Shown here: positions 6,197-42,925 of the stretch, piece by piece | Layout of the letters: every line of letters begins with the position of its first letter | Numbering within the stretch: the stretch's first letter is position 1 | NCBI GenBank assembly: GCA_965285935.1 | Contig: OZ260667.1 | Span: forward strand, 49,538,001-49,602,000 | Direction of reading: 5' to 3' | Length of the DNA: 64,000 nt | DNA from: Ophelia neglecta | Lineage: Eukaryota | Translations under genes and position numbers: made by a program | Notes under the pieces: generated by a model | What the model saw: only the letters and a program-made list of their open reading frames with translations | The model's database searches: none | What the model was told of the DNA's origin: nothing

Positions 6197-6202
6197 TCAC
6201 AT

Positions 6203-9200: not shown

Positions 9201-9678
9201 GCGGAGGTCATGTGGTTTTCAGATTGGCACGACACAAACATCATCAGCGAACCAAGGGTTTAGGCTGACGGATAATTCAAGGGTTGGGGAAAGGGTTAAG
9301 GCAGGATTAATAGCTCTAGTATTCTCTCTAAATTTAGGAATTTACCTCCGCAAGGCTTCGCCCCTCCGCTTTTAATCAAATGTCTATAATCTCACCTGCT
9401 ATTGTTGATAGACCCAGCTTGCAGGCACCAAGCGCTCCGATCATAGTCTGTGATATTTTGAAAGTTTCCTCTAATTCGGTGATGAAAACTCCATACGACA
9501 CCGAGTTGATAGCCATGAGGGAAAATGCAAGGAACGCGCAGCCCACAATCACCCAACCGAAACCGCCTTCCGTGGTACGGTCCTGGTGACCAGCATCCGG
9601 TGTCTCTTCATCCTTAGATAACTCGTCTACGCCGAGGGACGCCAAATTGGTGTGGCTTGGGAAAGATTCGGTTGCCAT
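6203..9678 (-). CDS. SLC16 / monocarboxylate transporter (MCT) family MFS transporter, five exons
   Basis: Exons 9678-9396, 8663-8520, 7585-6800, 6709-6584 and 6357-6203, all GT-AG with phase-1 introns. Motifs: EGGFGWVIV (TM1 signature), LTKRYGCRQI (loop 2-3), QQYFVKRRAIAAGIASAG (SLC16 signature), LIDAYGWRGAML and GWLFDVTGNY. Large central cytoplasmic loop. Confidence 0.93.
8090..8380. repeat. Degenerate ~15-bp tandem repeat (GGCCTATGTCCTGTA-like) in SLC16 intron 2
   Basis: Many variants of AGGCCTATGTCC. This explains the Cys/Leu/Pro-rich spurious ORF 8213-8461. Confidence 0.7.
9020..9162. mobile_element. Partial CAGTGAAACCTG-family MITE
   Basis: AATAACCTGTCTAAACAGACCACCTCC...ATCAGACCAGTATTTTCT closely matches the interior of the copy at 27916-28093. 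Confidence 0.65.
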
Positions 9679-10416
9679 TTTGATTTAATAATTTGGCTTC
9701 TAGAATCTCCTAAACACTCGTCTCGTCTCAAGCTGCATTGGTAATTTATTTCCTCTGAACTGACAGAATTTTCAGATCGATTGGAAATCAAGATGGCTGC
9801 AGCGGTGTATTGGTCAACATTGTTCTCGGCCGCGATAACTCTTGAACCATATAGCCACGCAGATTTATTGCGTAAAGGATTAGGCCACAGGCCATCGACC
9901 CCACATCGAGTCAAAAGGTGCACGTGATCACTATTCATGACAATAAGTATACCCACAGCCACCAGCGAACAGTGTAAGGAACTTAGGTAACTCTGGACAG
10001 AAATATACAAATAACTGACATAAATAAATACAGAAGAAGTACACAGGTCAACAACCTTACAGCAAAACAAGCTTGCGAGGCTGACCAACCAACTAGAATA
10101 CAAGCACCTCAAGTCTTTATTTAGACCACGCAGGCCTATCACGTGTTTACCTCGTGGAATTCTGGGGGGTTACGGGTGAACTGGCGGATCCACCAGTTCT
10201 CATGCAAATTCCACGTAGATTACACGTGATTCCAGGAACGAGGAAAAGATGTGAAATTCGCGCGTGGAAAAAGATGTGGACTAATGGTGGAGGTTAATTC
10301 ATAATATCGGTTAATTACACGTAGCTTCCACGTTATTTAAGGAACGTTGAAAAGATGTGAAATTCATAGCTGCAAACGATGTGGAATATTGGCAAAGTAT
10401 TGGCGAAGTACATGTA

Positions 10417-16325: not shown

Positions 16326-17139
16326 AAATTCAAATCAAGTCTTATATTTGAATCGTAAATGTGTTGAATTATTCAAAATCAGTTCAATTAGTCCCAATTA
16401 TACATGTGGGATATCAATATCAAAATCTGTTATTGTAAGGAGATAAGAGAATTCCTCTATTTGTTACATTCTAAGAAAATGTAGGTTCTGTAATAGCTTG
16501 TTTATTTGACAGTTGATTAATAAATGTAGCTTTGGTAGGCTGCTGTGCGTAAATGTAGTCGACTTGTTCAGAATAGTTAAGGTTTCCCGTATAGTTTTAG
16601 ATAATTATTAGGCTGGCAATGTACATATTTTTGGAGAACGAAATAAAAGTGGAGGTAAGGATGGCTACAAGGGGTGGTGGAGGCCATAAATTTTATTGTT
16701 AATTTTGTTATTTTATCTTGACAATGCACATGGAAATCTAAATATCACAGGTAAAACATAGGGAAAACACAGGGAATTGTACCATTGGGTGAGAGTGGGA
16801 ACCCGGACTAACTATCACCCTAAACACTGACCATTGATGAAAATGTATCTCTTGACACCGACCAATGTTGACAATGTAATGGCATGCATTGGCTCTACTC
16901 AGATGAAGTGATTTTTTTTCCGATTGGACGCTGTGTACAGCAAATATTGACAATTAATGTGTTCATTATCAACCTCCACGCGATGGCTGTTTCCAGGTAT
17001 GATAACTGGAAAAACATACGCCTTTTTGCACAAAATGTTGAAAAACGTACCCCCACACACGGGCCCTCGCGGGTTCGTGCCTAGGGCTCAAAAACATACC
17101 CTTTCCCGCGTTTTTTGTTCGATGATGATGACACTTTGG

Positions 17140-17850
17140 TACCCAGTATCAACGTTCTCCATGTGCAATATGTATCAAAATAATGTGAAACGCCTTGAAG
17201 ACACCAACGACTGAGTCTACAAAATAACTGTATCATCGGCGTATGACAATAGTAATAACCTCAGTGATCTGATAGAGATTCCATCAAGACCCCCTGACAT
17301 ATGACTAATCTCCAGTTCGTTAAGATAAATGGAGAAGAGGAAGAAGGGAGAAGGAAGGAAGAAACATTTCCCCTGCTAAACATCAATGAAACGCTCAAAT
17401 GTTTTAGACATAGAGCCATCAAAGCACAATACTTTAGTTTTAATGCAGCTATACATGCTCTGGATAACCCTGAGAAGTTTACCTGAAATGCCTGACTTGA
17501 TAAGCTTGTACCACATAACTTTGTGATTGACATAATCAAAAACCTTACGAAAGTCGACCAAAGCACAGTTAAGTTTGTATTTATCTGAAACATGTGAAAT
17601 CGGTCTATGCAGCAGAAAAATATTGTCGATAGCTTTTTCTGAAACGGGCCAGCGATTCTATGATGATGTCATACAGGTCGGCCCATTGCGTAAGGCGATT
17701 ATAACTTACCTTAGTGAACACTTTTCCCAGCATATTAAGATGCGAAATGCCCCGGTACTTATTCAAAGAAATTACGTCGCCGCCTGTGCTAAGAGGCCTA
17801 ATTATAATTACCAATCCTGTGCTGAGAAAATACCTGCTTAACTTCACCAT
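17140..17850 (-). mobile_element. Non-LTR retrotransposon (LINE) reverse-transcriptase fragment, degenerate
   Basis: YRGISHLNMLGKVF, FVDFRKVFDYVNHKVMWYKL...GISGK and LLSYADDTVIL (YADD at ~17232-17243), with frameshifts and stops. Confidence 0.85.
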
Positions 17851-20486
17851 TTAGGATTCCGGTGTCCAACTCTGAATATAAACCCTGGATATCCCTACTC
17901 GCAGAGTCACCAGAATGCAAAAAGGGCTCGAAGTAGGACCCATGCCTATATTCCAAAGATCCATTGGTCCGTTGGTCGGAAAGTCCATTGGTCCGAAAAT
18001 CCGTTGTTCCAACAAATATTCCTTATATGAGTGGCGATTTTAGTAGTAATGTGTGTGTGTGTGTCGGGGGGGGGGGGGGGGGGGGGCTTTTTCAGACACC
18101 TTTATGTTTCACCGTGATGTGAACGCGTCAGGGATAACCACCCTTATTCTTCTGTGTCTCAGGACATGGTATTTAATTTGTCCGTTCTTCGGGAACGAGA
18201 ACTCATTCTCTTTAATACACCAAAGTCCAGTTGGTTTGAAGGGGCAAAATTCACTGGCGTGTTTCTAATAAAATTGAATCCTTTCACTTCTAAACCTGTT
18301 TTTGTTCTCAACCATTGGAGGGAACCATGGAACAGACAAACGCGTTGAATTAAACCTACCTAGTCAAATATTCATTAGATTAACATAAAGCCCAAGTCAA
18401 CACTGGGCCAGACTAGGATTTAGGTAATCCCATAAACCAATATTTGGACAGTGATTCACTGTTGTTTTTGGTAAGGGATCGAGTTTCAAGCGCAAGTTTC
18501 TTCCAGTCTGTCATTATGTTCCAATAAAAGAAGAATTAATGTAACTCCCTCTATACGAAACTGGAGTTATTATGGAATAGTTACGGTAGACAGAAAAGGA
18601 ATACATTTATACTAGTAGACTCCGATTTTGGAGAGTGGTGCCTCGCCTGGTCTTGGAGACTACCAGTATCCGCGCAGACTAACGAAATATCTAATATGAA
18701 AAAGTCAAGAATAGGGTTATAGATACGATTTTATTGTCACTGGGCCATATAATATGGGGTCGGAGTGATGGACAAACTGTTTATACATTTACAAAAAACA
18801 TGGTCATTCACGGAATATAGGCCTACACCAAAAGCCGACTGAAAGGGCATACAGATAGATCGGGAGGCCGGTTAAAGATACATCATAATATTGATTGTAT
18901 AATTGTGAATTTGATATTTGTTATTATCAGACTACGCTTAAGGCAAGCAAAATCATTTATACAATAACAACAAATATATGACACAAAAAATCATAAAAAC
19001 CATCGTATATATGAACTGCAGTTATCATGGATATCTTTAAAATAATATTAATGCAATACCCCTTGTGGTTATCATTTACATGGTAAATTCACCGATAATA
19101 AACTCTCCTATGTACAAGGCTATTTGTCTTAAAGCGACTTCATGTATTAGATGTGTTGCGATTGTACCAGCCTGACGATAATAAACTCTCATATATGTAC
19201 AAGCGTCTACATGTATGGGGAGGTGCGGGAATTGTACCACCCTCACACAATTATGACTTCAAGCTGAAGCATACTTTCATAAAAAATGAATTTTATATGA
19301 AGATAAATTACTGTTATATATTACTGTGATTATTTGAATTTTCTTCTACACAAACGAAACATCAAACTTAAATTAAATTGAACATCACAATAACGTGCTT
19401 ACACCAAGCAGGCAAATGGTTCTTGATAAAACTCTCAAATGCGATCAATTTGCTTTCGTCCGATGATGTTTTCTGCATTGTATGTAGACTTGAAGACAAA
19501 AACCTGTCACAGACATTGAAGAATTTCAATAATACAGGCATCCTTGTTGGAGGGGTTTTAACCCCAGAGGGTGAAAGCAGCAGGTGGAGTATTCCATTTG
19601 GACTCCCTCTCCTGCCCTGACCCGCCCCAGTCTATATATATATGTATGTATGTATTTCATGTCATCCATTGAACGATATTTAGTTTAGTTAACTATAACA
19701 CAATGCCCACAATTTTCTCTATGAACTGTCCATATTTTGCCAAATCTAATAATTGTTGCACAACATTTTAACGGATTAAGCTTTGAGCTTACAAGTCGGC
19801 TAGTAAAGTGTAACGACCTCATCTTGTATTCCAAACGATGGCGTTGTTTTTTGTGTATCAAGCTCGTGGTCACTACCTCTGTCTGCGGAAATGCACTTTT
19901 TAATCTAGAAGCACCGTATTCCATGTGTCTTCATTTTACTGGGGATATAGGGGATGGGGAGGGACGACAAAGGGGTCCCAAGCCCATTTTCTTTCAGCGA
20001 GTTGACCCAGGGAGAAAATGGAGGGTGGAGGAAAGTGTCCCTCCCGGAGGGGGATGGGGGGTGTGTTCCCTACCAGGAGCGAGGGGGGGGGGGGCACATT
20101 TCATTTAAGATGGGAGCAAATCATAACAAAATCAATCGCTTATTAAAACTAGTGTATTGACTACAATGAATTCCTTCCTCCATGTCGCCATATCATTTAT
20201 ACAAGTGACTCCAATGATAAAGCATAGCCCAGCCACTTCTTTCAAATTTGGTTCATCCCTACAGTAGTTATTTAACGTTACTAACACCACTGCCTGGCAG
20301 ACACCAATGAGAGTCAACTCATTGTACGCAAGTGTTCAGCAGACAATGCTCATGTAAATAACGTTTTATCCAGCCCGTGAGTGCTATCCAGCCGCACAAT
20401 GTGATCACTATCCACTTTATTTATATTCAATTGTCCAGGGAGTAATACTTGATGAACGTTTCACTAGAACTACTGAGCAGTTAGTA

Positions 20487-21170
20487 TCACGAGCAAGAAA
20501 TCCACCTTGAGAGGAGATGTACGACACTGAACAGTAGTCCCAAATACACTACTACTGACGAACTCCTGTGGGAGTGGCTAGTACTGTATATTTTACTACT
20601 TCGTATCCCGTTACACTCACTTCTACCTATCCACCATTTGCGATAAAGACCATCCAAGTAACCGCTATCCTTGAGCATGCGCAGAGCCTTGTTAATTCTT
20701 TCCAAGTGGTCTGAATTTTTCTGGACAGCCAATGCGTAGCCGCGGTTTAGCAAAAAACGACCAACTGTCACAAGATCACATGGCTCGCGCATGGAAATGT
20801 ATTCCCCTATCGTGTTCGGTAAGACAAATCCGTACTTTTCTCGTCGCACCATCTCAATGCCTTCCTCATTTGTTGCAGTTAGAACCTTTGAACCTCGTTC
20901 GTCAAATCGTTGCATATGTCTCCACATCATTTTATATTCTGTTTCATTTGTCCTTTTGAAAGCGCGCAGGATCACTCCTCGGTCGAGCGTCCCATATTTG
21001 ATTTCTGATTGGTTGATAAGCTCATCGACGGAGCGTATTTTGACGGTGGCGCCGGCTGGCGCCTTTCGCAGTAGTACAGTGGCATGGACGGTCATGTAGG
21101 GTTCCGTGAAGTCTACCACGCTCGCTCGGTGTGACGTCACATACATCGGGGCGGCCGCCATTTCAGCTCT
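20487..21170 (-). CDS. Last exon of iGluR-LBD-only gene: end of S1, short linker, whole S2, hydrophobic C-terminal tail
   Basis: Acceptor TTTTCTCTAG|AGA at 21170; ORF track 20487-21161; AMPA/kainate-type motifs DFTEPYM, KYGTL, PCD, GYALA and KWW...EC. Confidence 0.92.
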   Translation of the reverse strand, partial: RAEMAAAPMYVTSHRASVVDFTEPYMTVHATVLLRKAPAGATVKIRSVDELINQSEIKYGTLDRGVILRAFKRTNETEYKMMWRHMQRFDERGSKVLTATNEEGIEMVRREKYGFVLPNTIGEYISMREPCDLVTVGRFLLNRGYALAVQKNSDHLERINKALRMLKDSGYLDGLYRKWWIGRSECNGIRSSKIYSTSHSHRSSSVVVYLGLLFSVVHLLSRWISCS

Positions 21171-24100
21171 CTAGAGAAAAGAAAGACAGTCACGTGATAA
21201 ATAAACACAGTACTGTTACGAGATGATGAACAACTCCACGAGTAGTTAGACATTTAAAATTTGAACTGTGAAATTGAATTTAACATCTGTGCTTTTTTCT
21301 TACCATCACATATTATCTGAACTTACATTAATGTCCTTAATTTTTAAAATCTATTTTAACCTAGAATAGCCGTAAAAATGCAATTTATTTGATTAATTGA
21401 TTCCTCATATTTAGAAGAGTTTCATAAATATGAATTTGAAAACGAAAACAAAGTGAACATAAATTCAGTTCTGTTATAATATATAATATAGTATACCAGG
21501 CATATAAATTGTTCAATTCAAGTTGGGTACATTTAAAAATATGAAGTTAAAACCCATTGGCCTAGGCGCATTTTTGGTTCCTCTGTGTAGGCATACAGTA
21601 CAGTAAAGCCGACCAATCAGCGATGCGCTTCTTCTGCACTGTGGTGTTGCTGCCTCCACAGGTAGCAGGTGGAGCACGGCCATCCAATATACAATATATA
21701 TCCAACAAAAATATGTGGCGCTTTTCTCATATACACGTCGACTATAGAGGTGAAGGCTTATATCTGTGAAAAGGCAATTTAACTGGATTTCAACCATGAT
21801 TTGATATTATACATCTCATAAAATTAGCTTCGTTTAGCAAATATATACCGTTGCGCTTAAATGTGTTTTCTGTTTACCAAACAACAGGTAAAAAAGGCGA
21901 ATATTTTAGGCCAATGAGATTTTCCAAATCTAGCGGCGGCTGCATAAACAAGAATATTTCTCATTAACCTATTGTGTTCATATGACGGAATTTAATGAAT
22001 TTGATTCCAATTCCAAGCAAAACTTTGTAAACCAACTTGACACCTCTTGGTAATATCACTCCAAAATATGACACGTTTGCTGTGATTTTGTTGCAGTTCT
22101 CTTGTAAATTGCATGTTTTGTGGAGATGTAACATTACCTTATAACGTATTGTTTTAAAATCTTCTTCTGCCAACTATATTTAACCTTTTTATTGTTCAAT
22201 AAATATATCCGTTGTCGGCGGCTCTTTACCGAACTTTTCCAAAGGACATTTTATTATTACATCTGCTGCGCCGTGGAGTAAAGTTGGTTGGCAAATTTGG
22301 GCGGACTGTTAAGACTGTTTACTAGTATTTCTGTGATTTACTAGTTCCAAGCCTATTAGTGCATTTTAGATACACACATATACGCGTTTCATCTCGACTT
22401 AAGTATAAATTACTCCACATCGGTTCCCAAAATTAACCATTATATATATTTTTTTTTTNNNNNNNNNNNNNNNNNNNNNNNNNNNNNNNNNNNNNNNNNN
22501 NNNNNNNNNNNNNNNNNNNNNNNNNNNNNNNNNNNNNNNNNNNNNNNNNNNNNNNNNNNNNNNNNNNNNNNNNNNNNNNNNNNNNNNNNNNNNNNNNNNN
22601 NNNNNNNNNNNNNNNNNNNNNNNNNNNNNNNNNNNNNNNNNNNNNNNTCAATAATTTCGTTTCTATATTAACAGGACATCACGCCCTGAAATAAAATATC
22701 GCCATTCTATCAAAGCAATCGATCCTATACAGGTGTAGTTTATCACAGGTAAAAAGGCGAATATTTCAGGCCAATGAGATTTTCCAAATCTAGCGGCGGC
22801 TGCATAAACAGGAATATTTCTCATTAACCTATTGTGTTCATATGACGGAATTTAATGAATTTTATTCCAATTTCAAGCAAAACTTTGTAAACCAACTTGA
22901 CACCTCTTGGTAATATCACAGACGTGTGTAGTTTATCACTGCACTGAGTTTCAGAGACATTAAGCAAAACAACTGCATGATCACCATGGGCGGTAAATCT
23001 ATGGTTCTTATTAACAGAAAGAAGATCACAGGGTAGATAGTGTTACGAATTATTAATCAACGATACCTCGATAAACATGCTTGGAATTCATATCATGTGC
23101 CTGATATTCCACTTATATTTCTCACACAATTTAAAAAGCAAGCTCGAAAACTAGGATACACGTTATTTGAATGCGTCTTAATCAAATGTAGGCACTGTCA
23201 TTTTTTCATGAACATAACACCTTGATCTGGCTGTAGTCAGAATCCGTGAAAAGACCATCTCTTTCAAAATGTGGTTCTCAAAACTAAACTACTCTTTATT
23301 TAATTAAATTCATGCATGAATGTATTTATGCAGTTGGCATTTTACATCTTGACATATACTTAATACTATCATGTTGTTAAATGGTTACCCGGCCTACATA
23401 GCTTTTTTTCGTCAGGACAAAATACCAATTAACAGATTAATACACGACTTGAGCAAACTTGGTCGAATTACTTTACATTACCCGTCTAAACTTTCACCAA
23501 TGGTCTTCTCTAAAAAGCCGGGTTATTGGAACGAAAAACGCTTATATTTCAAGGAATAAAATCTCCTTGGGCACACAAGCTTAATCATTTGAGGCGTTAA
23601 TGTCATAAATAAATCATCGCTTGTATCTACTCAACTAGCTGGCGCTTTATGACGCCTAGATGGCGCTCTATGACGCCTAGCTGGCGCGTTATGACGCCTA
23701 CCTGGCGCGCTATGACGCCTACCTGGCGCTCTAAGACGCCTAGCTGGTGCTCTATGGCGCCTAGCTTGTGCTCTATGACGCCTAGCTGGTGCTCTATGAC
23801 GCCTAGCTGGCACTCTTTGATGCCTAGTTGGCGCTGTATGACGCCTAGCTTGTGCTCTATGACGCCTAGCAGAGGCTCTTTCACGCCTAGCTGGCGCTAT
23901 ATGACGCCTAGATGACGCTCTATGACGCGGAGCTGGGGCTCTATGACGCCTAGCTGGTGCTCTATGACGCCTAGCTGGTGCTCTATGACGCCTAGCTGGC
24001 ACTCTAAGGCGCCTAGTTGGCGCTCTATGACGCCTAGCTTGCGCTCTATGACGCCTTGCTGGGGCTCTATGAAGCCTAGCTGGTGCTATATGACGCCTAG

Positions 24101-27100
24101 CTGGCGCTCTATGACGCCTCGCTGGCGCACTATTACGCCTAGCTGGTGTTCTATGACGCCTAGCTGGCACTCTTTGACGCCTAGTTTGCGCTCTATGACG
24201 CCTGGCTCGCGCTCTATGACGCCTAGCTGGGGCTCTATGACGCCTAGCTGCTGCTCTATGACGCCTAGCAGCTGCTCTATGATGCCTAGCTGGTGCTCTA
24301 TGACGCCTAACTGGTGCTCTATGACGCCTAGCTGGCACTCTTTGACGCCTAGTTGGCGCTCTATGACGCCTAGCTTGCGCTCTATGACGCCTAGCTGGTG
24401 TTCTATGACGCCTAGCTGGATCTCTATGACGCCTAGCTTGCGCTCCATGACGCCTAGCTGGGGCTCTATGACACCTAGCTGGTGCTCTATGACGCCTAGC
24501 TGGCGCTCTATGACGCCTAGCTGGCGCTCTATGACGCCTTGTTTGCGCTCTTTGACGCCTAGCTTCGGCTCACTGACTCCTAACAGACGCCCTATGACGC
24601 CTAGCTGGTGCTCTATGACGCCTAGCTGCGCTCTATGACGCCTAGCTGGTGCTCTATGACGCCTAGCTGGTGCTCTATGACGCCTAGCTGGGGCTCTTTG
24701 ACGTCTAGCTGGCACTCTTTGATACCTAGTTGGCGCTCCATGACGCCTAGCTGGGGCTCTTTTACGCCAAGCTGGCGCTCTATGACGCCGAGCTGGTGCT
24801 CTTTGACGCGTAGCTGCTGCTCTATGACGCCTAGCTTGCGCTCCATGACGCCGAGCTGGGGCTCTATGACACCTAGCTGGTGCTCTATGACGCCAAGCTG
24901 GTGCTCTATGACGCCTAGCTGGCGCTCTATGACGCCTAGCTGGTGCTTTATGACGCCTAGCTGGTGCTCTATGACGCCTAGCTGGCGCTCTATGACACCT
25001 AGCTGGTGCTCTATGACTCCTAGCTGGTGCTCTATGACGCCTAGCTGGTGCTCTATGACACCTAGCTGGCGCTCTATGACGCCTAGCTGGTGCTCTATGA
25101 CGCCTAGCTGGCGCTCTATGACGCCTAGCTGGTGCTCTATGACGCCTAGCTGGTGCTCTATGACGCCTAGCTGGCGCTCTATGACGCCTAGCTGGTGCTC
25201 TATGACGCCTAGCTGGTGCTCTATGACGCCTAGCTGGTGCTCTATGACGCCTAGCTGGTGCTCTATGACGCCTAGCAGGTGCTCTATGACGCCTAGCTGG
25301 TTCTCTATGATGCCTAGCTGGATCTCTATGACGCCTAGTTGGTGCTCTATGACGCCTAGCTGGCGCTCTATGACGCCTAGCTGGTGCTCTATGACGCCTA
25401 GCTGGTGCTCTATGACGCCTAGCTGGTGTTCTATGACGCCTAACTGATGCTCTATGACGCCTAGCTGGTGCTCTATGACGCCTAGCTGGTGCTCTATGAC
25501 GCCTTGCTAGTGCTTTATGACGCCTAGCTGGCGCCTTATTACTTTTAACAGAGTTGTATGACGCCTAGCTTGGGCCCTATGACGCTCTTTGAGGCCTCAA
25601 TGGCGCTCTATGACGCCTAACTGTCGCTCTATGGCGTCTAACTAGCGCTCTATGGCGCCTTCCTCTACATAAATAGAGTCAGTGAGCTTTCTGAGGTGGG
25701 ATTTCTACCATTGTGGCGTCCATGAGAACTTGCAGAGAAAATACTAATATTTACTTTACGAAAAAGAGCCTTCAGTTGCGGAGACCAAGCCACCTAACTT
25801 CCTTAACAATGCATTATTCCGGTCACGTGATCGAAGCTGGCGGCGATCGGTTGAGATATTTAGGCTGTCAGTTAAGTCTAAACGTTGCTTTTATGAAGGA
25901 AAAGCATGTCATCGCGTTTTTTACATTCAAACTTTGATTAATATGGTACACGTCTGACGTTTTCGTCTTAGCGAATTAATTATAGTTCCTTATCTTCCAC
26001 GATACTTATAAAAGCATTATCATATTTAATAGACCCAGTCTTTGGACTAAAACGAAGTCTGTGCCAACCAATTTTCGCATTAAACAACTAACAAAAGTCG
26101 CCTCCGTGAAAAGCCTTTGCCATTCAGACAAAAACCTTTCCTATCAATATATATATAGGGTTATTTACACCAACGTCGTAATAAATAGGTCTAGGATCTT
26201 CCTTTTCCGGTTTATACTATAATTAGATTAGTTATCCGCCATGCCACTAGGCCAATCCACTCTGATGAGCTTCCCAGTGCACATTTTAAGATGATATTGA
26301 TTTTGCTGAAGCACCTCGTTAATTTTTTATAGCCATGTCGATCTCGGTTAAGACTGATGTCTTATTTCTTATTACTCCCTGGTTCTCCTGATCCTGGAAA
26401 TAAATTGGTAATGAACACCCTCAAAATAGTGTAGAACTTGGATACGGACACCTGCCGGATGTAGGGAACGGTGGGGTGCCCGGGGTAAGTGGCTGGAGGT
26501 GTCGAGGGTCCAGACTACCGCTGTCTTTACACACGTTCCTGCTGGTAATTTCTATTGGTCGTCTGGGGTGGTACCTCTTCCGAGACTGAGGTCTTAGCTC
26601 CCACCCCTCTCTCTCCACCACCTTTCTGGGTGGAGTTATCACCCCCATCCTCATAGTGAAAACAGACACAATTTAATATTCGAAATTTAACTCTTTAGCT
26701 GGAGGCGTCGAGAGTGCTTACTTCCACAGTCCTCACATACATTCCTGCCGGCAAATTCTATTTGGCTTCTGGGCGGTTGCCTCAAATGGAAGTTCTAAAC
26801 CGCTCCCCATCCCTTTTCTGGGAAGCTTTATCATCCCCTTACCCTCAATGGTTCCATAATTGCAGACACAATTATGGAACTTTAACTGTCTTTTTTTTTA
26901 TTGCCAAATTAACTCCCGGCTGATAAAAATAATAAGCCGTGGGAAGACTACCAGTGTCAGCCGAGCACGGGTTTACCCAAATACACCCACGGTCTGTGGT
27001 CCTACAGCAGACATTTAAGTCTAATCTGTGATCGACCATTTTATTAAGTATTTTTGAAATTAACTTGGTATACCAAATGATAGGAATTGAAAACGTGGGT

Positions 27101-29648
27101 GGGGGGGTGGGGGGGTGGGGTGGCGTCTGGTGAGGAGGTCAGCTAGTCACAATTATGCCATTCATTTTTCTACTTCGAATCTACTTACTCTGGAGTACGG
27201 CACAATGCCAGTTTAAGATTGTACGATGATATCAAGGTACGACGCATGTACATCACACGGTGTATCAATCACTGGCATGCATTACACTAGGGAGAAAGCA
27301 CGTGGTAGAGGTCGCTCGAGGAGACCAAAACAGGTTAGGTTCATTTACCGTCCAAACAACCAACGAGCCATGCTTTCTCTATCTGAAGGCTCCCTGCCCG
27401 CGGTTCACTACTTCTAGAACTACATGATCTTGAAGGGGAGAGATAGCGGCGGGTGCAAAATATACTGTACTACACAATGTCCATGTAGAAATAGGTCACC
27501 GGCAGCCTTGTGCCATCACCACAGCAAATTAACTACGGTTAGGCTACAAATATTATGGTTATAATGATACTGAATGTGTTTTTACCATGACTTTCACTAG
27601 CGCAAATCAATATATATTAATGTTTCATCAATGTAGTGCATAGAACCTTGTCGACTTGCTCGATTTGATCATTTCAACGTATTGTTTGTTGGCACAAAGC
27701 AATCAGTTGGCTTTGATTTTTAAATATTCACTAGACTAAGATCGTGCAGATTTCCCACAGCCACATGGATCGATGGGGTGGCATTGTTTTCCGTATAAAA
27801 AGAACGAGTTTATAAAGTAGTATTTTTTTCCAATCATGACAAAGCAATTCGTTGCCATTGCGTCTCTTGACTGTAAAATAATTTATCATAAACCGTATCA
27901 ATATTTAGCCAAATACAGTGAAACCTGCCTTAAAGACCACCTCTATTATCAGACCAACTGCCAATTAAGACCACTGATATGACGACCATGTTACATACTT
28001 ACTATGTTAAATAACCTGTCTAAACATACCACCTCCGAAATCAGACCAGTATTTTCTAGTCCCTTTGGTGGTCTTAATGGACAGGTTTCATTGTAATCAA
28101 ATTATTTCCTATAGTTAACTTCCACGGATTTTCTGCCTACTCACCCCTGACAGCAGTTCGCCGACCATGCCATCCCAGGTGCCGTCTGCCTGTCGGTATC
28201 CATAGCTACCGTCTGCCACGTGCGTTAGCTGGTACCGAAATCCGGCTATCTGTGAAAGCTTGTCGACAAGGTCGGCTACAAAACCAACGTACGGACGCTC
28301 GGAGGACGTCGTCTTGTTGTTGTAATCCCAGTTTCGCATTAAATACGGCTCAACCTGGTAAATGGTTAGAAACGGGTTACGAAGGTACAATTTCAATTTG
28401 CGCTACTCCAAATTGATCCGCAACATTCATTCAAACAGTGAGAGTAAAAAATGATAATATGGAGCGTGATAAGTTCAGCAGAACAGGAAGGCAAAGGTGT
28501 GAGACAGGTTTGCAAATATTAATCCAATGAGATGGACAATTTTGTCTAAACTTACATTTCATGCAAGTCTTAATGGAGCGATAATTATGTCATGGGCATG
28601 CAGTTATTTACTGGAAGGCGGGTGGGGGTGGGGTTGATGGGCAATACACCATTGTGGGAAGGTTACTATATACATTATAAGAAATGTATATACCCAGATG
28701 CTGGAATCGAGGCCCTCGGTCGCAAGGAGTTAACCGCGGTAATCATATGCTAATGAGCTGCGAATCGGGCCGCACATGCGCAGAAGTGTCCGGACGAGCC
28801 AATTTGTAAACAAACAGCCCCATCAATGGGAGCCCCAGCAATGCGGAATAGCCAGAGAAAACTTTTGTATATTTTCTGCGCGGATAATGATTGAACATGG
28901 AAACAACTCATCAATAATACACCGGGAAGAAATGTTGACAGGAGTCTTGTTGATTATTGATGACAAGCTGCGATACAAAGAGGTTTTTTCGTTACAAATG
29001 TCCACTGTCAGCAATCTGGCCAGCACGTGGTGTTGTCAGACCGTTACCGATACGTAAAGGGGCATTATGGTCTATTTGTGACGTATACAACAATACTTGG
29101 TGTTCAAAGTAGTCATAAATCACACATATTCATTAAACAAAATTGATTTTTGACCGAATATTTAGCGGAAGCAAGTACAATGCGAAATGCACATATCATT
29201 TTCGAATATGGCCCCTAACGACTGGATCTCCGAGGCTATCGCTGAAGATATCTGTGGGAAAATAACATCACCAACGCATGTGGCATGCTACTTGAGCAAT
29301 AATCCTACCTTCCGATTCTCTGTACATACATATTTTAAATAATGTTACATGTACCCTCCGACTACGCAAATTTATTGCTGTTAGTGTTTTGGTGACTGCT
29401 GTTCGCTCGTCTTCCTCGTTGTGAACACAATGGCGGCTCTCGAAATTCGCGCATAAAATCCCGCGTACAGCGTGATCTCGTGTGTGGGTAACCTATAACC
29501 ATTTGCGCAATGTGTAAGGAGGGACTGATTCCAATCTCTGGGTACATACATCTCTCAAATTAGTGAAAAAAGATTAATGCACGCACCAACACACTGGTTA
29601 CCCGCAGCTTGGAGCCACTCTCCCCATAACGAGTCGCTGCATCAACAT
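20487..29648 (-). CDS. iGluR ligand-binding-domain-only protein (S1 fused directly to S2, no ion channel, putative GPI anchor); first (signal peptide) exon not identified
   Basis: Exons 29648-29587 (xVDAATRYGESGSKLRVTSVL), 28354-28145 (VEPYLM...GFVADLVDKLSQIAGFRY...VADGSYG...WDGMVGELLSG) and 21170-20487 (RAEMAAAPMYVTSHRASVVDFTEPYM...IRSVDELINQSEIKYGTL...REPCDL...GYALAVQKNS...LYRKWWIGRSEC...). GT-AG introns, phases 0 and 0, about 318 codons with no internal stops. Confidence 0.9.
21884..22919. repeat. ~175-bp direct duplication (21884-22059 and 22745-22919) on either side of the assembly gap
   Basis: ACAGGTAAAAA(A)GGCGAATATT...CACCTCTTGGTAATATCAC occurs twice with a handful of substitutions. 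Confidence 0.9.
22459..22647. other. Assembly gap (189 N)
   Basis: Run of N. Confidence 1.
23634..25660. repeat. 21-bp minisatellite (CTCTATGACGCCTAGCTGGTG), ~95 units, intronic
   Basis: Uninterrupted tandem units. It accounts for all the MTPSWCS, ARRHRAP and LGVIEHQ repeat ORFs. Confidence 0.97.
27916..28093. mobile_element. MITE, CAGTGAAACCTG family
   Basis: TA|CAGTGAAACCTGCCTTAAAGACCACC ... GGTGGTCTTAATGGACAGGTTTCATTG|TA. Confidence 0.85.
28145..28354 (-). CDS. S1 exon of iGluR-LBD-only gene
   Basis: Acceptor TTTACCAG|GTT, donor GGG|GTGAGT; motifs EPYLM, GFVADL, DGSYG and WDGMVGEL. Confidence 0.92.
29587..29648 (-). CDS. 62-bp exon carrying the first beta-strand of S1 (KLRVTSVL)
   Basis: Strong acceptor TTTCCCTTTCAG|AT and donor TTG|GTGCGT. 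Joins in frame to give KLRVTSVLVEPYLM, comparable to GluA2 KTVVVTTILESPYVM. Confidence 0.8.
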
Positions 29649-32420: not shown

Positions 32421-35400
32421 TCCCCGATTGAACATCAGCCTCCAATAGCCTGAGGGTCATTCATTTTGATCAACCCCAACACCGTGTCTTCACTTTAGTA
32501 GATGAAGATGCAGGAGTAGTTTAATGAAAAGACACAATTCCTCTGGGCGAATTAGCAGACGGCTCTCTACTCGCTATGGATATAAATGTTTTCACCCGCC
32601 AGGTTTGCATTATCACCGAAAATGGTGGTGAATTTCACATCGGATGATTAAACGAGTTGTTCTATTCAGTTAAGTATGCTGTTGTAAGAAGGGTCGAAGG
32701 ATACCGCAAACATTGTTTATATCGTCCAGATTGCATACATTGTAATCAGAGACCTCAATGTAAATTACTATGAAATAAAGAACTTCCTCGTCTTGTTTAT
32801 AACACGATATCAATGGGGAACATTGATGCGGTAAGCGGCCCCAGGTGGCAGCACACTGTGAACAGGTCCCTCTGTACTTCCTGTTTGCTGCTAACTGTGT
32901 GAAGACATGTAAATGCACCGGCATATTGGAATTAAACCTCTCAAAACCTTGCTGTTAAATTCCACTGCCTGTCTTATTCAGTATGTGATCAAATGAGTTC
33001 GTTTGAAGTCCAGAGAAAATGGTAAAATGGCCAAAAAGCAATATTTCTAGGAGTTAATGGCAGGAACTGCTTTCAAAAACTTACTAATTGGCTATTTGGG
33101 TATTGTTCTTTTCTGCTTCTTGTTTATAATCAACATACAGAGAAAATGGCACTACAGATGGCCATGGATAAAACTTTAATTGCAACCAAGACAATGTAAT
33201 ATGTTAACGGGGGTCCCAGCAATGCATGGAATAGTCGTACCAAGTGGGTTTTCAATTAACCCTGAAGCGCCGTTATTTGCAATTTGTTAAAGTGGTTCGG
33301 CTCGTCTTTTATACATTAACAACAAAGCTACTAGCTATAAACCTTGTCAACATAGACACTGGCAATATTCTAGTGCTGCCATTAAGTTTGTATCGCATGC
33401 ATTTCAATGAAATAAAGTACCGACGTTATTTGAGCGCAAACCGAGCCGCAATGCCGGCAGACGCCATCGGAATAGTTCATCGTTTGGGTCTAAGTACAAC
33501 AAATGACCGAGACTGCTGCGCAGTCCTTGTTCGGCCAGACAAACAACCACGTGACGTGAGGGCTAACGAGCTGAAAAACGGCCTTAGTACCCATTGGCTT
33601 GTTTTTGTTTGTCATTTACATCCACTTACATCCGGGCACCCGCGGCAGGTGCCATATAACGACTAACGAACCCCTTCCTCCTTGGCCAGTCATCACTAAA
33701 AATGGTAGTAAACTCTGCCGGAAAGCTGCGGGCGTTGATGGTAACGGAAGGCGGGAACAACGTGCCCCCCCCCCCCCTTGAATACACATACTTTCCCCCG
33801 TCCCAACACTATCTACAAATTCAAAACAAACAGAAAACATACCATTGCAAATGACAGCTCTTCTAGATATTTAAGGGCTTCAATTATATATAAATATCAG
33901 CATGCTTTCATAATACAATGGCTACTAGTTGAGTATCAATTATACCATGATCAGGGCCCATAATACAGCAATATACCATGCCATGATGTACTCCTGTGTC
34001 ATGGAAGGTTTATGATTCGACCCTCCAAGCAGGGACTTAATATTCTTATATATGACTGAAACATGGATGTTATGGCTTACCAGATAAGTGTAATACTATG
34101 GCTATACAAGTGAAGACGGACACATCCATCTCCGGGGGCGGGGTCAGCCACATCACGGGAAATCAGGACAACCCTCTTCTTCTAGTACCCCATCTGATCA
34201 AATGAAATGTAAAACATTTTATTCTATAAGAAAATGGGTAATACGGAATTGAGGAATTATATTTTGATAACGTATGGTTGTGCGTGCTTTGTGAAATTGG
34301 GAAAATCCAACCGTACACCGAAAGCGATTCTTGTGTTAAAATCGTGACATTCAAATGTTGATTATAATCAATGCCTACACAATTGCAAAATGACTTTTCA
34401 ACCTTTTCTCAATTGGTAATATTTCATGTGATGCCAGGTCCATGCATGTGTGTACACTTGTAATTATTAAAATATAATCTCGTGACATTTGAACACCACA
34501 AGTCAATATTGTTTCCATAGATATATTTGTCACAAAAATTCAATGTCATTCTTGATATAACAAAAGTGTGTGTGTATGACATTGTTTCAAGGTATAAAAA
34601 CGCAGTACTTTGAAAACCACTGAAGTCTGAGAGCATAAAACGGGAAATAGTCCGTAGTAAGCCAAAATACATTGTGAGCAATTAACCGTAAGAGAATGAA
34701 AAATAACCCTTACACCTTATTGCACTTTAGTTCACAGGCAACTTTGTATAGTTGTCGGTTTCGCCATTTTTCTCTAATTATTCTGAGCGCGTTTATTGAC
34801 CATTAAAACATTAGCTCGGCGGCTTTTAGAGTATAACTAAACGGCCTTGCTTGAAACCATTAAATGGCCCAATATATGGTGGACACCCTTGTATAGCTGT
34901 CAGTGACATCAGCCATGTTGTCCAGCAAATCGTTGGAGCATAATATAAATCACATTTCTATAACCTCTATAGTTACCTAGTTTAAGGCGAAGTAACCATG
35001 AGCAGGTGCTAAAAGCAATAGTTACGAAATGATGTTTAACAATTTTCCACCCCATAAGTGTATATAATGAGCAATTCTTAGCATAGTCGTAATTCTAGTG
35101 CCTCGTATTGTTCACTCCCAAATATGAATAGTGATTGCCAAAAACCCTATTCATACTTTGTGCATATGATTTCTTTTGGAATAAGAGAACCTAAATTTTG
35201 TATTTTTGCAATTCTTAATGCTATAAAATAATCAATTGCCGTGTGATTCATTCAAAAAAATTTGTGCAAAAATGCATGATTATCTGCACGTTGTTTTGTA
35301 GTTGCTATTACACAGTACGATCTAGGTTATTATGCATTAATTATTATATTCTATGTATATTTACCAAAATTAACAATAAAAACTCTTGCGATTATGATGA

Positions 35401-41734: not shown

Positions 41735-42925
41735 AAGTTTATTCAATCAATGAAACTAGTACAAGCTTGTACATTGAATATACACCGATATTTACCTATA
41801 TGAGATCGGGAGAGTAATATAAAGTCTACCGTTAGTACATAAAATACTGTTAGTACATAAAATAACCATAAACATTATAATAAACTGACATAAACTGACA
41901 TCACTGATTGCTATGAATTTTTAAGGCTTTGTCTATAAATATGGCTAAGTTATTTAAGGTTTTTTTCTAGCCACAGTTAACAAGAGAAATAAATTTATAC
42001 ATGTTAGGCCTCACTCTGAAGTATGGCGGAATATATTTTAGTCTAAGTTGCTGGTATGAGGTACATTCAAAGAGTACATGAAATTCATCTTCAATTTTAC
42101 CACAATGCTGGCAAAGTCTCTGATTATAAGGAACTGGATTCCTACCCCAGGAGCCCGCCTCTACTTTGAGTCTATGATTTCTGGTACGAAACTTACATAT
42201 GGTAGTTACACGGTTACTGGAGAGTCCAGCTGTGACATACTTTGGCAGACTAGTCAAACTAGTATCCTCAATTAAACCCTTGTAAAATATACCCTTAGAA
42301 GATGATGTTAAGTTTCCATCCATATTTTGCTGGGCTGTATCCAATAACCTCTGTTTTAACATAGAAATAAATAACACATCATTCCCCGGCCCCTGTGCGT
42401 CCCACACTTCGCCAAAGCCATATGTAAATAGTAAAGTTTTCACACTTTTTGTCCAGTTGGTAACACCATGGTTTTCCATAAATTGATACAATTTCTTCGT
42501 TAATCTATTACCGTCCATATGGAGTATTTTCAACCAATACTTGACAATTTTTACATATCTACCAACATACAAAGGTGCTCTTCCCATCTCCCTGTAAACA
42601 AACTCGTTCTTTGTATTACTACGTACACACATTAACCTATTACAAAATGCCAAGTGCACTTTCTCAATGTCCGGTGCTAAATGAAAACCCCTGGCTTCTG
42701 AACCATAGGAAAGAACAGGCAGTATAAGTTTGTCAAAAAGTTGAATTCGTTCCGTAATTGAAAATTTAAAACTATAAATGCACTGATAATATTTGAAAAG
42801 AGCTTTGCGTGCTTGTCCAGCAATAGTTTTTTGTGCCACAGTCCAGCTACCGTTTCCAGAAAAAGTAACACCTAAGTAACAGAAATGCTTTACAATCTCC
42901 AATTCAACACCATTATACATAAAAC
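41735..42925 (-). mobile_element. 5'-truncated LINE: 3' end of ORF2 plus 3' UTR
   Basis: 317-aa ORF: EIVKHFCYLGVTF (post-RT), LFDKLILPVLSYGSE, and FRTRNHRLKVEAG...RLCQHCGKIEDEFHVLFEC (C-terminal cysteine/histidine domain). Clade (CR1-like or RTE-X-like) not determined. Confidence 0.9.

What the first reader, a model, noticed from the sequence alone, without database searches (positions are those of the whole stretch)
20487..20620. C-terminus looks like a GPI-anchor signal replacing M4
Seen: after KWWIGRSEC the protein continues NGIRSSKIY-STS-HSHRSSS-VVVYLGLLFSVVHLL-SRWISCS*. That is a small-residue triplet, a polar spacer and a ~15-residue hydrophobic segment with essentially no cytoplasmic tail, and the conserved pre-M4/M4 motif (L.L.N..G.F) is absent. 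Three N-glycosylation sequons (NKT, NQS, NET) fit passage through the secretory pathway. Inference: the LBD is displayed on the cell surface by a GPI anchor (omega near the Ser of YSTS) and could be shed. Alternatively the tail is a degenerate M4 acting as a single anchor.
Basis: partly seen in the sequence, partly recalled or inferred. Interest (0 to 1): 0.75.

Follow-up and report, generated by a model that had tools for sequence, protein, structure and literature searches.

The report
Lipid-anchor tail on channel-less glutamate-receptor protein
A worm gene encodes only the ligand-binding part of a glutamate receptor, and its tail looks like a signal that is cut off and replaced by a lipid (GPI) anchor; many related genes share this design, which appears undescribed and is untested.

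Summary
On the minus strand, the exon at 21170-20487 encodes the end of S1 joined directly to S2 of an AMPA-like glutamate-receptor binding domain, with no M1-M3. After KWWIGRSEC it continues in frame with NGIRSSKIY, STS, HSHRSSS, VVVYLGLLFSVVHLL, SRWISCS and a stop.

This tail is coding sequence, not intron read-through. 69 of 73 homologous ORFs, nine paralogues in the same genome and full-length relatives that carry signal peptides have the same layout. That layout is a conserved linker, small residues, a polar spacer, a hydrophobic stretch (median 16 residues), then a stop a median of 3 residues later. Tail sequence identity is only 28%, against 58% for the domain.

The window tail fits the published omega/spacer/tail scheme exactly: omega is S196, the spacer runs from omega+3 to omega+9, and the hydrophobic tail starts at omega+10. 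No M4-like exon occurs in the window, and no pore exon occurs on the whole contig.

Best reading (0.7): a GPI-attachment signal, probably descended from M4, that tethers a channel-less binding domain to the cell surface. The main rival (0.2) is an uncleaved short membrane anchor.

No RNA data, dedicated GPI predictor or biochemistry was available. Seven full-text searches found no description of such proteins.

The parts
34081..34153 (-). Candidate exon 1, the signal peptide. ATG at 34153 or 34129; peptide ends ...MDVSVFTCIAIVLHLS; donor GTAAGC at 34080; phase 1.
   Evidence: this was the only ATG/hydrophobic/donor candidate in the 10.3 kb upstream of exon 2. Two paralogues have one candidate exon each (two alternative ATGs in L022), in the same phase (L021 MDTKHLILAAFFAFHTLSTVAS, L022 METKHLMLGVFVACLSLATVVP). 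Coordinates. Inferred; no RNA.
29587..29648 (-). Exon 2 (62 nt): ..VDAATRYGESGSKLRVTSVL, acceptor ttcag, donor GTGCGT. Encodes the first strand of S1.
   Evidence: the same short exon ([LIV][RK][VI]xx[IVL] followed by GT) is found upstream of exon 3 in 4 of 4 paralogues examined. Coordinates.
28145..28354 (-). Exon 3: VEPYLMRNWDYNNKT...WDGMVGELLSG, the first part of S1. Sequon NKT at 28318-28310; donor GTGAGT at 28144.
   Evidence: the homologous exon sits 0.35-5 kb from exon 4 in the five paralogues L002-L006.
20487..21170 (-). Exon 4, the last exon: end of S1, 8-residue linker APAGATVK (21062-21039) in place of M1-M3, S2, tail and stop. Acceptor AG at 21172-21171.
   Evidence: PF00497 at 42 bits; PF10613 weaker, 27.3 bits, under its 30-bit cut-off; one continuous alignment to engineered GluA2/3/4 S1S2 constructs, E=1.7e-33, running across their artificial linker; 0 of 14 haplotype differences in contig 19986-21937 fall inside this exon.
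20613..20639 (-). KWWIGRSEC: the last helix and last disulfide Cys (C186 of the exon ORF) of the binding domain.
   Evidence: alignment; this Cys is invariant in 15 of 15 aligned relatives; the confident fold ends here in the model of relative P0079.
20615..20620 (-). GTGAGT, a splice-donor look-alike inside the Ser-Glu-Cys codons. Not a conserved site.
   Evidence: paralogues L002-L006 have AGCTTT, AGCACC, AGCGAA, AGCACC and ACACAA at this place, so none has a GT donor.
20586..20612 (-). NGIRSSKIY: conserved linker between the domain and the omega region (omega-9 to omega-1).
   Evidence: C-N-G-I-[KR]-S-S-K-I-Y-S recurs in homologues of 50-74% identity and in paralogues L002-L004, so it is coding sequence under constraint.
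20577..20585 (-). S196-T197-S198: candidate omega, omega+1 and omega+2 (small residues).
   Evidence: The scheme is taken from passages of PMC2571997.
20556..20576 (-). HSHRSSS: polar spacer, exactly omega+3 to omega+9.
20511..20555 (-). VVVYLGLLFSVVHLL: 15-residue hydrophobic stretch starting at omega+10.
20487..20510 (-). SRWISCS plus the TGA stop (20489-20487): a 7-residue end with no cytoplasmic domain.
   Evidence: In the family a median of 3 residues follows the hydrophobic stretch.
20416..20421 (-). AATAAA 68 nt after the stop: a possible polyadenylation signal. Weak evidence.
   Evidence: By my estimate the expected chance count in 500 nt of this composition is about 0.4.

Best explanation
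The last 31 residues of this annelid protein (T197 to S227 of the exon-4 ORF, window 20582-20490) are a C-terminal GPI-attachment signal.

Proposed mechanism:
1. An N-terminal signal peptide takes the protein into the ER.
2. The glutamate-receptor-type binding domain (S1 joined directly to S2) folds in the lumen.
3. The hydrophobic end holds the C-terminus at the membrane.
4. GPI transamidase cuts at or near S196 and transfers the domain to a GPI lipid.
5. A channel-less amino-acid-binding domain is thereby displayed on the outer leaflet of the cell surface.

The signal most likely arose from the pre-M4 linker and M4 helix of an AMPA/kainate-like ancestor, through loss of the cytoplasmic tail and shortening of the helix.

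Shown here: the sequence, its fit to the omega/spacer/tail scheme, conservation of the pattern across the family, absence of pore and M4 exons, and presence of transamidase genes.

Inferred: cleavage, lipid attachment, surface display and descent from M4.
For: 1. Exact fit to the scheme quoted in PMC2571997 (passages):
- omega S196 (Ser is among the typical residues);
- omega+1 and omega+2 are T and S;
- the spacer omega+3..+9 is HSHRSSS;
- the hydrophobic stretch starts at omega+10.
That paper's two top discriminating features are both high: mean hydropathy of the last 20 residues is 1.40 (96.7th percentile of null), and Ser in the last 40 residues is 0.30 (99.9th percentile).

2. The pattern is conserved but the sequence is not.
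- 69 of 73 homologues have the tail.
- In the 44 of 73 with a recognisable motif, identity is 58% for the domain and 28% for the tail. For the closest homologue it is 80% against 28%.
- Family median hydropathy of the last 20 residues is 1.36. The null median is -0.04 and the median for 30 proteins over 600 residues (taken as canonical receptors) is -0.50.

3. The hydrophobic stretch is short and terminal (140 tails).
- Median length is 16 residues (IQR 13-19); it reaches 20 or more in only 28 of 140.
- A median of 3 residues follows it, and 8 or fewer in 129 of 140.
- No K/R follows it in 77 of 140, and two or more in only 11 of 140.
- By contrast, most of the 23 canonical M4 segments are followed by K/R-rich sequence.

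4. More distant relatives have textbook signals directly after the last Cys. Examples are paralogue L007 (C-E-T-S-G-S-G-G then LSPVLLAMLANALLALCIT) and P0148 (C-G-G-S-S-A-G...).

5. Entry into the secretory route is plausible.
- By eye, 11 of 15 aligned full-length relatives have hydrophobic leaders.
- A candidate signal-peptide exon exists in the window.
- The F[KR]xTNxT sequon is kept in 116 of 174 family proteins.

6. Genes for the transamidase subunits Gaa1 and Gpi16 are present.

7. There is no alternative ending.
- No M4-like exon in the window: best hit E=0.87 on the wrong strand, against a positive control of 2.4e-11.
- 0 of 54 Lig_chan matches lie on this contig.
- The donor look-alike is not conserved.
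Against: - No dedicated GPI predictor could be run. My rule-based test is home-made and was not benchmarked on proven GPI proteins. It fails 61 of 163 family tails, including paralogues L002, L005 and L006.
- Small residues show no sharp peak at a fixed distance before the hydrophobic stretch. They make up 45-55% of positions -14 to -7.
- By my hand calculation, the best 19-residue hydropathy window of the tail is about 1.8, above the classical 1.6 threshold. Hydropathy alone therefore cannot exclude a membrane-spanning helix.
- Seven residues, including one Arg, follow the hydrophobic stretch in the window copy.
- No RNA run exists for this species. The transcript end and the first exon are inferred.
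- The family ORFs are mostly mechanical ORF calls on short contigs of unnamed organisms, and they are not independent samples.
Confidence: 0.7

Rival explanations
1. The hydrophobic end is not cleaved. It is a degenerate M4 that serves as a single membrane-spanning anchor of a type I protein with an ultrashort cytoplasmic end.
For: - A forced global profile alignment puts the tail opposite pre-M4/M4, and S-K sits 6-7 residues after the Cys in both groups.
- By hand calculation the tail's best 19-residue hydropathy window is about 1.8.
- The hydrophobic stretch is 20 or more residues in 28 of 140 family tails.
- C-terminal GPI signals and short TM anchors are known to be confused; PMC2571997 gives the alpha2-delta example (passage).
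Against: - Median stretch length is 16 residues, and 15 in the window with a His inside, which is short for a bilayer span.
- 77 of 140 tails have no K/R after the stretch, and a median of 3 residues follows it.
- A polar, Ser/Gly/Ala/Asn-rich segment always precedes it.
- Distant relatives have only about 10 residues between the domain's last Cys and a 12-15-residue hydrophobic end.
Confidence: 0.2
2. The window copy is a decaying or unexpressed duplicate. Its tail then has no present function, even if the family's tails do.
For: - No RNA run is on record.
- The gene has long introns (4.4 and 7 kb) containing a minisatellite and an assembly gap.
- There are 11 paralogues on the same contig.
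- The window tail lacks the Asn that many relatives have after Y-S-x.
Against: - All four exons are open and have good splice sites.
- The second haplotype shows 0 differences in the 684-nt exon against 14 in the 1268 nt around it; if the differences were spread evenly the chance of this is about 0.002 (my estimate).
- Identity to a homologue on another contig is 74% overall and 80% over the domain.
Confidence: 0.06
3. The tail is intron or 3' flank read through by ORF calling, and the real mRNA splices after ...SEC to an exon with a true M4 and a cytoplasmic tail.
For: - GTGAGT occurs at 20620-20615.
- From my recollection, some vertebrate receptor genes have an intron near this point; this was not tested here.
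Against: - The donor look-alike is absent in 5 of 5 paralogues, and using it would remove the invariant Cys.
- N-G-I-[KR]-S-S-K-I-Y-S is conserved across species.
- The stop lies 8 or fewer residues after the hydrophobic stretch in 129 of 140 tails. Random read-through would give about 35% (my estimate).
- No M4-like ORF occurs anywhere in the 64 kb.
- A canonical receptor of this genome has KWW..C and M4 in one exon.
- Full-length relatives on 1.2-2.2 kb contigs read uninterrupted from leader to this stop, across the intron positions.
Confidence: 0.03

Closest known systems
Engineered S1S2 ligand-binding cores of AMPA receptors (e.g. PDB 3fas, 1ftj, 8i0b)
   Same: S1 is joined to S2 by a short linker in place of M1-M3. 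Exon 4 aligns in one stretch across that linker at E=1.7e-33.
   Different: Those are laboratory constructs: soluble, with no leader or anchor. Here the fusion is natural, sits inside one exon and is followed by an anchor signal.
Canonical AMPA/kainate-type iGluR subunits, including those of this genome (L015, L016)
   Same: They share the binding domain, the final KWW...C helix and disulfide, and possibly the S-K...L-S-N pre-M4 linker.
   Different: This gene has no M1-M3 pore (0 of 54 Lig_chan matches on this contig). It also has no recognisable M4 and no cytoplasmic tail.
EhVFT of Entamoeba histolytica (PMC12965686, abstract read)
   Same: A periplasmic-binding-protein-type ligand-binding module that lacks a transmembrane domain and is held on the cell membrane by a GPI anchor.
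   Different: It has a class C GPCR/PBP-type Venus flytrap, not an iGluR S1S2 domain. It comes from a protist, and its anchor was tested experimentally, whereas here it is only predicted.
SmGBP, truncated metabotropic glutamate receptor of Schistosoma mansoni (PMC3206071, abstract read)
   Same: A lophotrochozoan glutamate-receptor-derived binding protein that has lost its membrane-spanning signalling part yet stays tightly membrane-associated on the surface.
   Different: It derives from an mGluR, and the abstract does not resolve how it attaches to the membrane.
Acetylcholine-binding protein (AChBP) of molluscs and annelids (recalled; only met in the listing)
   Same: A natural stand-alone copy of the ligand-binding domain of a ligand-gated ion channel in the same animal clade. 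It is thought to buffer transmitter.
   Different: It belongs to the Cys-loop superfamily and is a secreted soluble pentamer without a lipid anchor (recalled).
Calcium-channel alpha2-delta subunit (passage of PMC2571997)
   Same: Its C-terminal hydrophobic segment was annotated as a transmembrane helix but predicted to be a cleaved GPI signal.
   Different: An unrelated protein. It illustrates the TM-versus-GPI ambiguity only.

Membership tests
GPI-anchored proteins (C-terminal GPI-attachment signal) | N-terminal ER signal peptide | tested here: met
   In silico only. One candidate exon lies in the 10.3 kb upstream of exon 2 (34153/34129-34081) with a hydrophobic core, phase 1 and a good donor. 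Candidate exons in the same phase exist in paralogues L021 and L022. By eye, 11 of 15 aligned full-length relatives have a hydrophobic leader, and the model of P0079 has an N-terminal helix at 4-19. No RNA confirms the exon.
GPI-anchored proteins (C-terminal GPI-attachment signal) | Small residues from omega-1 to omega+2, with omega typically C/D/G/N/S | tested here: met
   Y195-S196-T197-S198. The criterion comes from PMC2571997 passages. The omega-1 residue (Tyr) is not small. Across the family small residues are broadly enriched (45-55%) without a sharp peak.
GPI-anchored proteins (C-terminal GPI-attachment signal) | Polar spacer at omega+3..omega+9, then a hydrophobic tail from about omega+10 to the C-terminal end | tested here: met
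   HSHRSSS occupies omega+3..+9 and VVVYLGLLFSVVHLL starts at omega+10, followed by 7 residues and the stop. In the family the stretch has a median of 16 residues, with a median of 3 residues after it.
GPI-anchored proteins (C-terminal GPI-attachment signal) | Positive call by a trained predictor (NetGPI, PredGPI, big-PI) | not testable with these tools
   None of these programs is available here. Only a home-made rule was run (102 of 163 family tails against 57 of 1401 null).
GPI-anchored proteins (C-terminal GPI-attachment signal) | Host has the GPI transamidase machinery | tested here: met
   Multi-exon matches over the Pfam cut-offs for Gaa1 (PF04114, best E=7e-25) and Gpi16 (PF04113, best E=2e-38) on contig C5.
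GPI-anchored proteins (C-terminal GPI-attachment signal) | Biochemical proof: PI-PLC release, loss of the C-terminal propeptide, lipid/ethanolamine label | not testable with these tools
   Requires an experiment.
Ionotropic glutamate receptor channel subunits | S1S2 ligand-binding domain | tested here: met
   PF00497 over its cut-off; PF10613 matches weakly, 27.3 bits, under its 30-bit cut-off. E=1.7e-33 to GluA4/GluA2 binding cores. The model of relative P0079 has pLDDT above 90 over most of the domain.
Ionotropic glutamate receptor channel subunits | Pore module M1-M2-M3 with the SYTANLAAF gate | tested here: not met
   An 8-residue linker replaces it inside one exon. Of 54 PF00060 matches in the genome, 0 lie on contig C12. 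This gene is therefore not filed as a channel subunit.
Ionotropic glutamate receptor channel subunits | M4 helix followed by a cytoplasmic tail | tested here: not met
   The M4 profile gives positive control E=2.4e-11, best hit in the window E=0.87 on the other strand, and the tail ORF is not among the listed hits. The stop comes 7 residues after the hydrophobic stretch.
Bacterial periplasmic solute-binding proteins, family 3 (possible contaminant or transfer) | Closest relatives are bacterial and the gene is intronless | tested here: not met
   The best solved relatives are animal AMPA receptors. The gene has four exons with GT-AG introns. Named homologues are from the annelids Capitella, Paralvinella and Helobdella. 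The JGI label 'ABC-type amino acid transport substrate-binding protein' on some relatives is an automatic name.
Single-pass type I membrane proteins (uncleaved anchor) | Hydrophobic helix long enough to span the bilayer, flanked by cytoplasmic basic residues | tested here: inconclusive
   The window has 15 hydrophobic residues, then SRWISCS with one Arg. In the family 28 of 140 stretches are 20 or more residues, and 11 of 140 have two or more K/R after the stretch. However, the best 19-residue hydropathy window is about 1.8 by hand calculation, above the classical threshold.

The most novel reading that the evidence does not exclude
Annelids have a whole family of GPI-tethered, channel-less glutamate-receptor binding domains. 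The scan found at least 11 paralogues in this genome and well over 100 distinct ORFs elsewhere.

This family would be the glutamate-receptor counterpart of AChBP or of GFR-alpha-type co-receptors. Its lipid-anchor signal would have been made by trimming the receptor's own M4 helix.

Such proteins could do three things:
- capture amino acids at the cell surface;
- buffer transmitter;
- hand ligand or signal to a transmembrane partner.

Receptor phylogenies that discard sequences lacking the pore motif would have missed them.
Probability: 0.6. Interest if true: 0.75.

Novelty: new variant of a known kind. Interest (0 to 1): 0.65.

Why it matters
If the tail is a GPI signal, this would be the first natural iGluR binding domain known to work without a channel as a lipid-tethered surface protein.

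It would matter in four ways:
- It opens a new function for the fold in animals: chemosensing, transmitter buffering or co-receptor signalling.
- It gives a worked example of a transmembrane helix evolving into a GPI signal.
- It supplies natural, presumably well-folding S1S2 proteins for structural work and biosensors.
- It shows that receptor surveys which require the pore motif overlook a sizeable gene family. PMC6307864 states that it discarded sequences keeping fewer than four residues of SYTANLAAF.

If the tail is instead an uncleaved anchor, the family is still new but the anchor itself is ordinary.

Tried and rejected
- RNA evidence. The look-up of sequencing runs found no RNA run. The three holders are genomic contigs from one sample. 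Laying them showed only that the exon is invariant between haplotypes.
I could not fetch the DNA of the closest homologue P0001 or of the putative transcript contigs, so calling them 'transcripts' is an inference from their uninterrupted ORFs.
- Widening the family with names failed. A search with P0148 gave 2 hits and a search with alignment A1 gave 7. Two cluster look-ups named only Capitella teleta. I could not establish the taxonomic range beyond three named annelids.
- The ESM Atlas look-up gave only generic receptor clusters.
- A DNA comparison of two JGI relatives (L026 and L027) was 89% identical, flanks included, so it could not test selection on the tail.
- Descent from M4 is not established. 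A forced global profile-profile alignment puts the tail opposite pre-M4/M4, but with no confidence in that part. The M4 profile does not detect the tail. I therefore keep descent from M4 as an inference.
- A position-specific small-residue peak before the hydrophobic stretch was looked for and not found.
- Bacterial origin or contamination was considered and rejected, because the gene has introns and its relatives are animal.
- Literature. Seven full-text searches, plus term look-ups in PMC6307864 and PMC12226733, found no description of lipid-anchored or pore-less iGluR binding-domain proteins.
- No structure-library search was run on the model, because sequence similarity already settles the fold.
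Full report
**What is in the sequence.**

The window is a stretch of an animal genome, contig C12 of a 762-Mb assembly. Named homologues come from the annelids Paralvinella, Helobdella and Capitella.

On the minus strand, the ORF at 21170-20487 is an exon. It is preceded by a polypyrimidine tract and an AG at 21172-21171. It encodes:
- the end of lobe S1 of a glutamate-receptor ligand-binding domain;
- an eight-residue linker, APAGATVK;
- all of S2 up to KWWIGRSEC.

It matches PF00497 over its cut-off; the PF10613 match (27.3 bits) falls below that family's 30-bit cut-off. It aligns in one uninterrupted stretch, E=1.7e-33, to the engineered S1S2 cores of GluA2-4, running straight across their artificial linker. 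M1-M3 are therefore absent from within a single exon.

**The rest of the gene.**

- Exon 3 (28354-28145) encodes VEPYLM...GELLSG, including the NKT sequon.
- A 62-nt exon 2 (29648-29587) encodes ..GSKLRVTSVL. The same short exon is found in 4 of 4 paralogues examined.
- I scanned the 10.3 kb upstream of exon 2 for an ATG followed by a hydrophobic core and a splice donor. Exactly one locus was found, at 34153/34129-34081, with peptide ending ...MDVSVFTCIAIVLHLS, in phase 1, which is the phase exon 2 needs. Paralogues L021 and L022 each have one such exon in the same phase.

It is an inference, because no RNA is available. I did not send a joined model to any search.

**Is the tail coding or read-through?**

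This was the main risk, because GTGAGT occurs at 20620-20615. Five results argue that the tail is coding.

1. The GTGAGT hexamer is only the Ser-Glu-Cys codons. Paralogues L002-L006 have other codons there and no GT. Using it as a donor would delete a Cys that is invariant in 15 of 15 aligned relatives.

2. Conservation. Of 73 homologous ORFs, 69 have the KWW..C motif followed by a tail; the other 4 lack the motif or are cut short. C-N-G-I-[KR]-S-S-K-I-Y-S recurs at 50-74% overall identity.

3. Position of the stop. The stop comes right after the hydrophobic stretch. A median of 3 residues follows it, and 8 or fewer in 129 of 140 tails. By my estimate, random read-through at 3 stops per 64 codons would give about 35%.

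4. No alternative ending. I built a profile from 23 canonical pre-M4/M4 segments.
   - It finds the last exon of a canonical receptor of this genome at E=2.4e-11.
   - It finds nothing in the 64-kb window better than E=0.87, and that hit is on the plus strand at 51266-51460.
   - The best minus-strand hit downstream of the exon is E=4.4 at 16338-16397.

   In addition, none of the 54 Lig_chan matches in the genome lies on contig C12, where all 11 paralogues sit.

5. Uninterrupted full-length relatives. Relatives of 300-346 residues on contigs of 1.2-2.2 kb read without interruption from a hydrophobic leader, through the positions where this genome has introns, to the same kind of tail and stop. 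These are P0080, P0084, P0130, P0148, P0160, P0161, P0184, P0203 and L028. They are most simply spliced mRNAs.

**Does the tail look like a GPI signal?**

The scheme quoted in PMC2571997 (passages read) has four parts:
- an unstructured linker of about 11 residues before omega-1;
- small residues from omega-1 to omega+2;
- a spacer at omega+3..+9;
- a hydrophobic tail from omega+10 to the end.

Typical omega residues are C, D, G, N and S.

With omega at S196, the window tail fits to the residue. T and S occupy omega+1 and omega+2, HSHRSSS is the spacer, and V206 at omega+10 starts the 15-residue hydrophobic stretch. One blemish is that omega-1 is Tyr, which is not small.

That paper's two most discriminating features are hydropathy of the last 20 residues and Ser content of the last 40. 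Both are high here: 1.40 and 0.30, the 96.7th and 99.9th percentiles of null ORF tails.

**Family-level evidence.**

| Measure | Family | Comparison |
|---|---|---|
| Median hydropathy of last 20 residues | 1.36 (156 tails) | null -0.04; 30 proteins over 600 residues (taken as canonical receptors) -0.50 |
| 12-residue hydropathy window of 2.0 or more | 75% of 69 tails | 9.9% of 1601 null tails |
| Home-made omega/spacer/tail/short-end rule | 102 of 163 | 57 of 1401 null |
| Median identity to the window protein (44 of 73 with a recognisable motif) | domain 58% | tail 28% |

- For the home-made rule, 56 of 219 sequences were dropped beforehand. They were longer than 400 residues, lacked the WW motif, or ended within 12 residues of it.
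- The rule is crude. It fails evident cases such as P0148 (C-G-G-S-S-A-G..), and it also fails paralogues L002, L005 and L006.
- The identity gap is the behaviour expected of a propeptide that is selected for its physical properties only. For the closest homologue it is 80% against 28%.
- More distant relatives have unrelated but even more typical signals directly after the Cys. Examples are paralogue L007 (E-T-S-G-S-G-G then LSPVLLAMLANALLALCIT) and P0130, P0160, P0168, P0183, P0184 and L025-L027.
- A few relatives have no hydrophobic end and may be soluble (P0170, P0181, L029).
- Genes for the transamidase subunits Gaa1 and Gpi16 are present.
- An AlphaFold model of the Capitella relative P0079 has a confident domain: pLDDT is above 90 over most of residues 40-300, and the mean is 83.4. 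It has an N-terminal helix at 4-19, a low-confidence segment after the Cys, and a terminal helix at 323-338.

**GPI signal or uncleaved anchor?**

For a GPI signal:
- The hydrophobic stretch has a median of 16 residues (IQR 13-19). It reaches 20 or more in only 28 of 140 tails.
- No K/R follows it in 77 of 140 tails, and two or more in only 11 of 140.
- Canonical M4 segments are about 21 residues long, and most of the 23 are followed by K/R-rich sequence.

Against:
- The window tail's best 19-residue hydropathy window is about 1.8 by my hand calculation, above the classical threshold.
- Small residues show no sharp position-specific peak.
- No trained predictor or experiment was available.

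I put the GPI reading at 0.7 and the uncleaved anchor at 0.2.

**Origin of the tail.**

- In canonical receptors, S-K lies 6-7 residues after the Cys and is followed by ..L-S-L-S-N and then M4.
- The family has S-S-K at the same distance, followed by I-Y-S-[LV]-N.
- A forced global profile alignment puts I-Y-S opposite L-S-L-S-N and the hydrophobic end opposite M4, but with no confidence there. The M4 profile does not detect the tail.
- A canonical receptor of this genome has KWW..C and M4 in one exon, so truncation within an exon is a simple route.

Descent from M4 is therefore plausible but not shown.

**Other support, and what is missing.**

- The second haplotype of the sequenced animal differs at 12 single bases and 2 indels in contig 19986-21937. 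None of these falls inside the 684-nt exon. If the differences were spread evenly, the chance of that is about 0.002 by my estimate. The tail alone is too short for this test to say anything.
- An AATAAA lies 68 nt after the stop, which is weak evidence.
- No RNA run exists for the species. Other follow-up notes of this scan say the same.

**Comparison with what is known.**

- The protein is not a channel subunit, because the pore and M4 tests fail. It is an iGluR-derived binding domain.
- It works like GPI-tethered binding modules such as EhVFT of Entamoeba (abstract).
- It resembles the membrane-associated truncated mGluR SmGBP of Schistosoma (abstract).
- From recollection, it also resembles AChBP and GFR-alpha-type co-receptors.
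- Seven full-text searches found no description of lipid-anchored or pore-less iGluR binding-domain proteins.
- PMC6307864 states that sequences keeping fewer than four residues of SYTANLAAF were discarded from its phylogeny (passage). This would explain how the family was overlooked.
- The Capitella member is annotated only as a hypothetical protein.

**Verdict.**

- Novelty: a new variant of known kinds, combining a GPI-anchored surface protein with an iGluR binding domain.
- Interest: 0.65.

Noticed in passing
window 23630-25564: A minisatellite of about 1.9 kb made of 21-nt units lies inside the 7-kb intron between exons 3 and 4. It is open in several frames (HRAPARR.. / QLGVIE..) and has locally high GC (0.54).
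   Followed up: no
window 17220-17850 and 41970-42956, minus strand: Reverse-transcriptase-like ORF pieces from LINE-type retroelement remnants lie downstream of the gene and in the region upstream of its first exon.
   Followed up: no
window 6200-9684, minus strand: Exons of a major-facilitator / monocarboxylate-transporter-like gene (GFGWVIVGCAFLAFS...). This is the next gene downstream on the same strand.
   Followed up: no
L015 (G000:C7:35197391-35200768): A canonical receptor of this genome carries the S1 end, M1-M3 and the S2 start in one exon. A single in-frame deletion inside an exon could therefore have produced the S1-S2 fusion seen in exon 4.
   Followed up: partly
G000 contig C12 (L002-L012): All 11 channel-less paralogues lie on the same contig as the window, three of them within about 1.1 Mb. 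All 54 pore-domain matches lie on other contigs.
   Followed up: partly
P0170, P0181, L029:2241-2777: Some family members end right after the last Cys, or in a His-rich stretch, with no hydrophobic end. They may be secreted soluble versions.
   Followed up: no
window 19936-20100: A G-rich low-complexity stretch lies just downstream of the gene. The two haplotypes differ there by several substitutions and two single-base indels.
   Followed up: no
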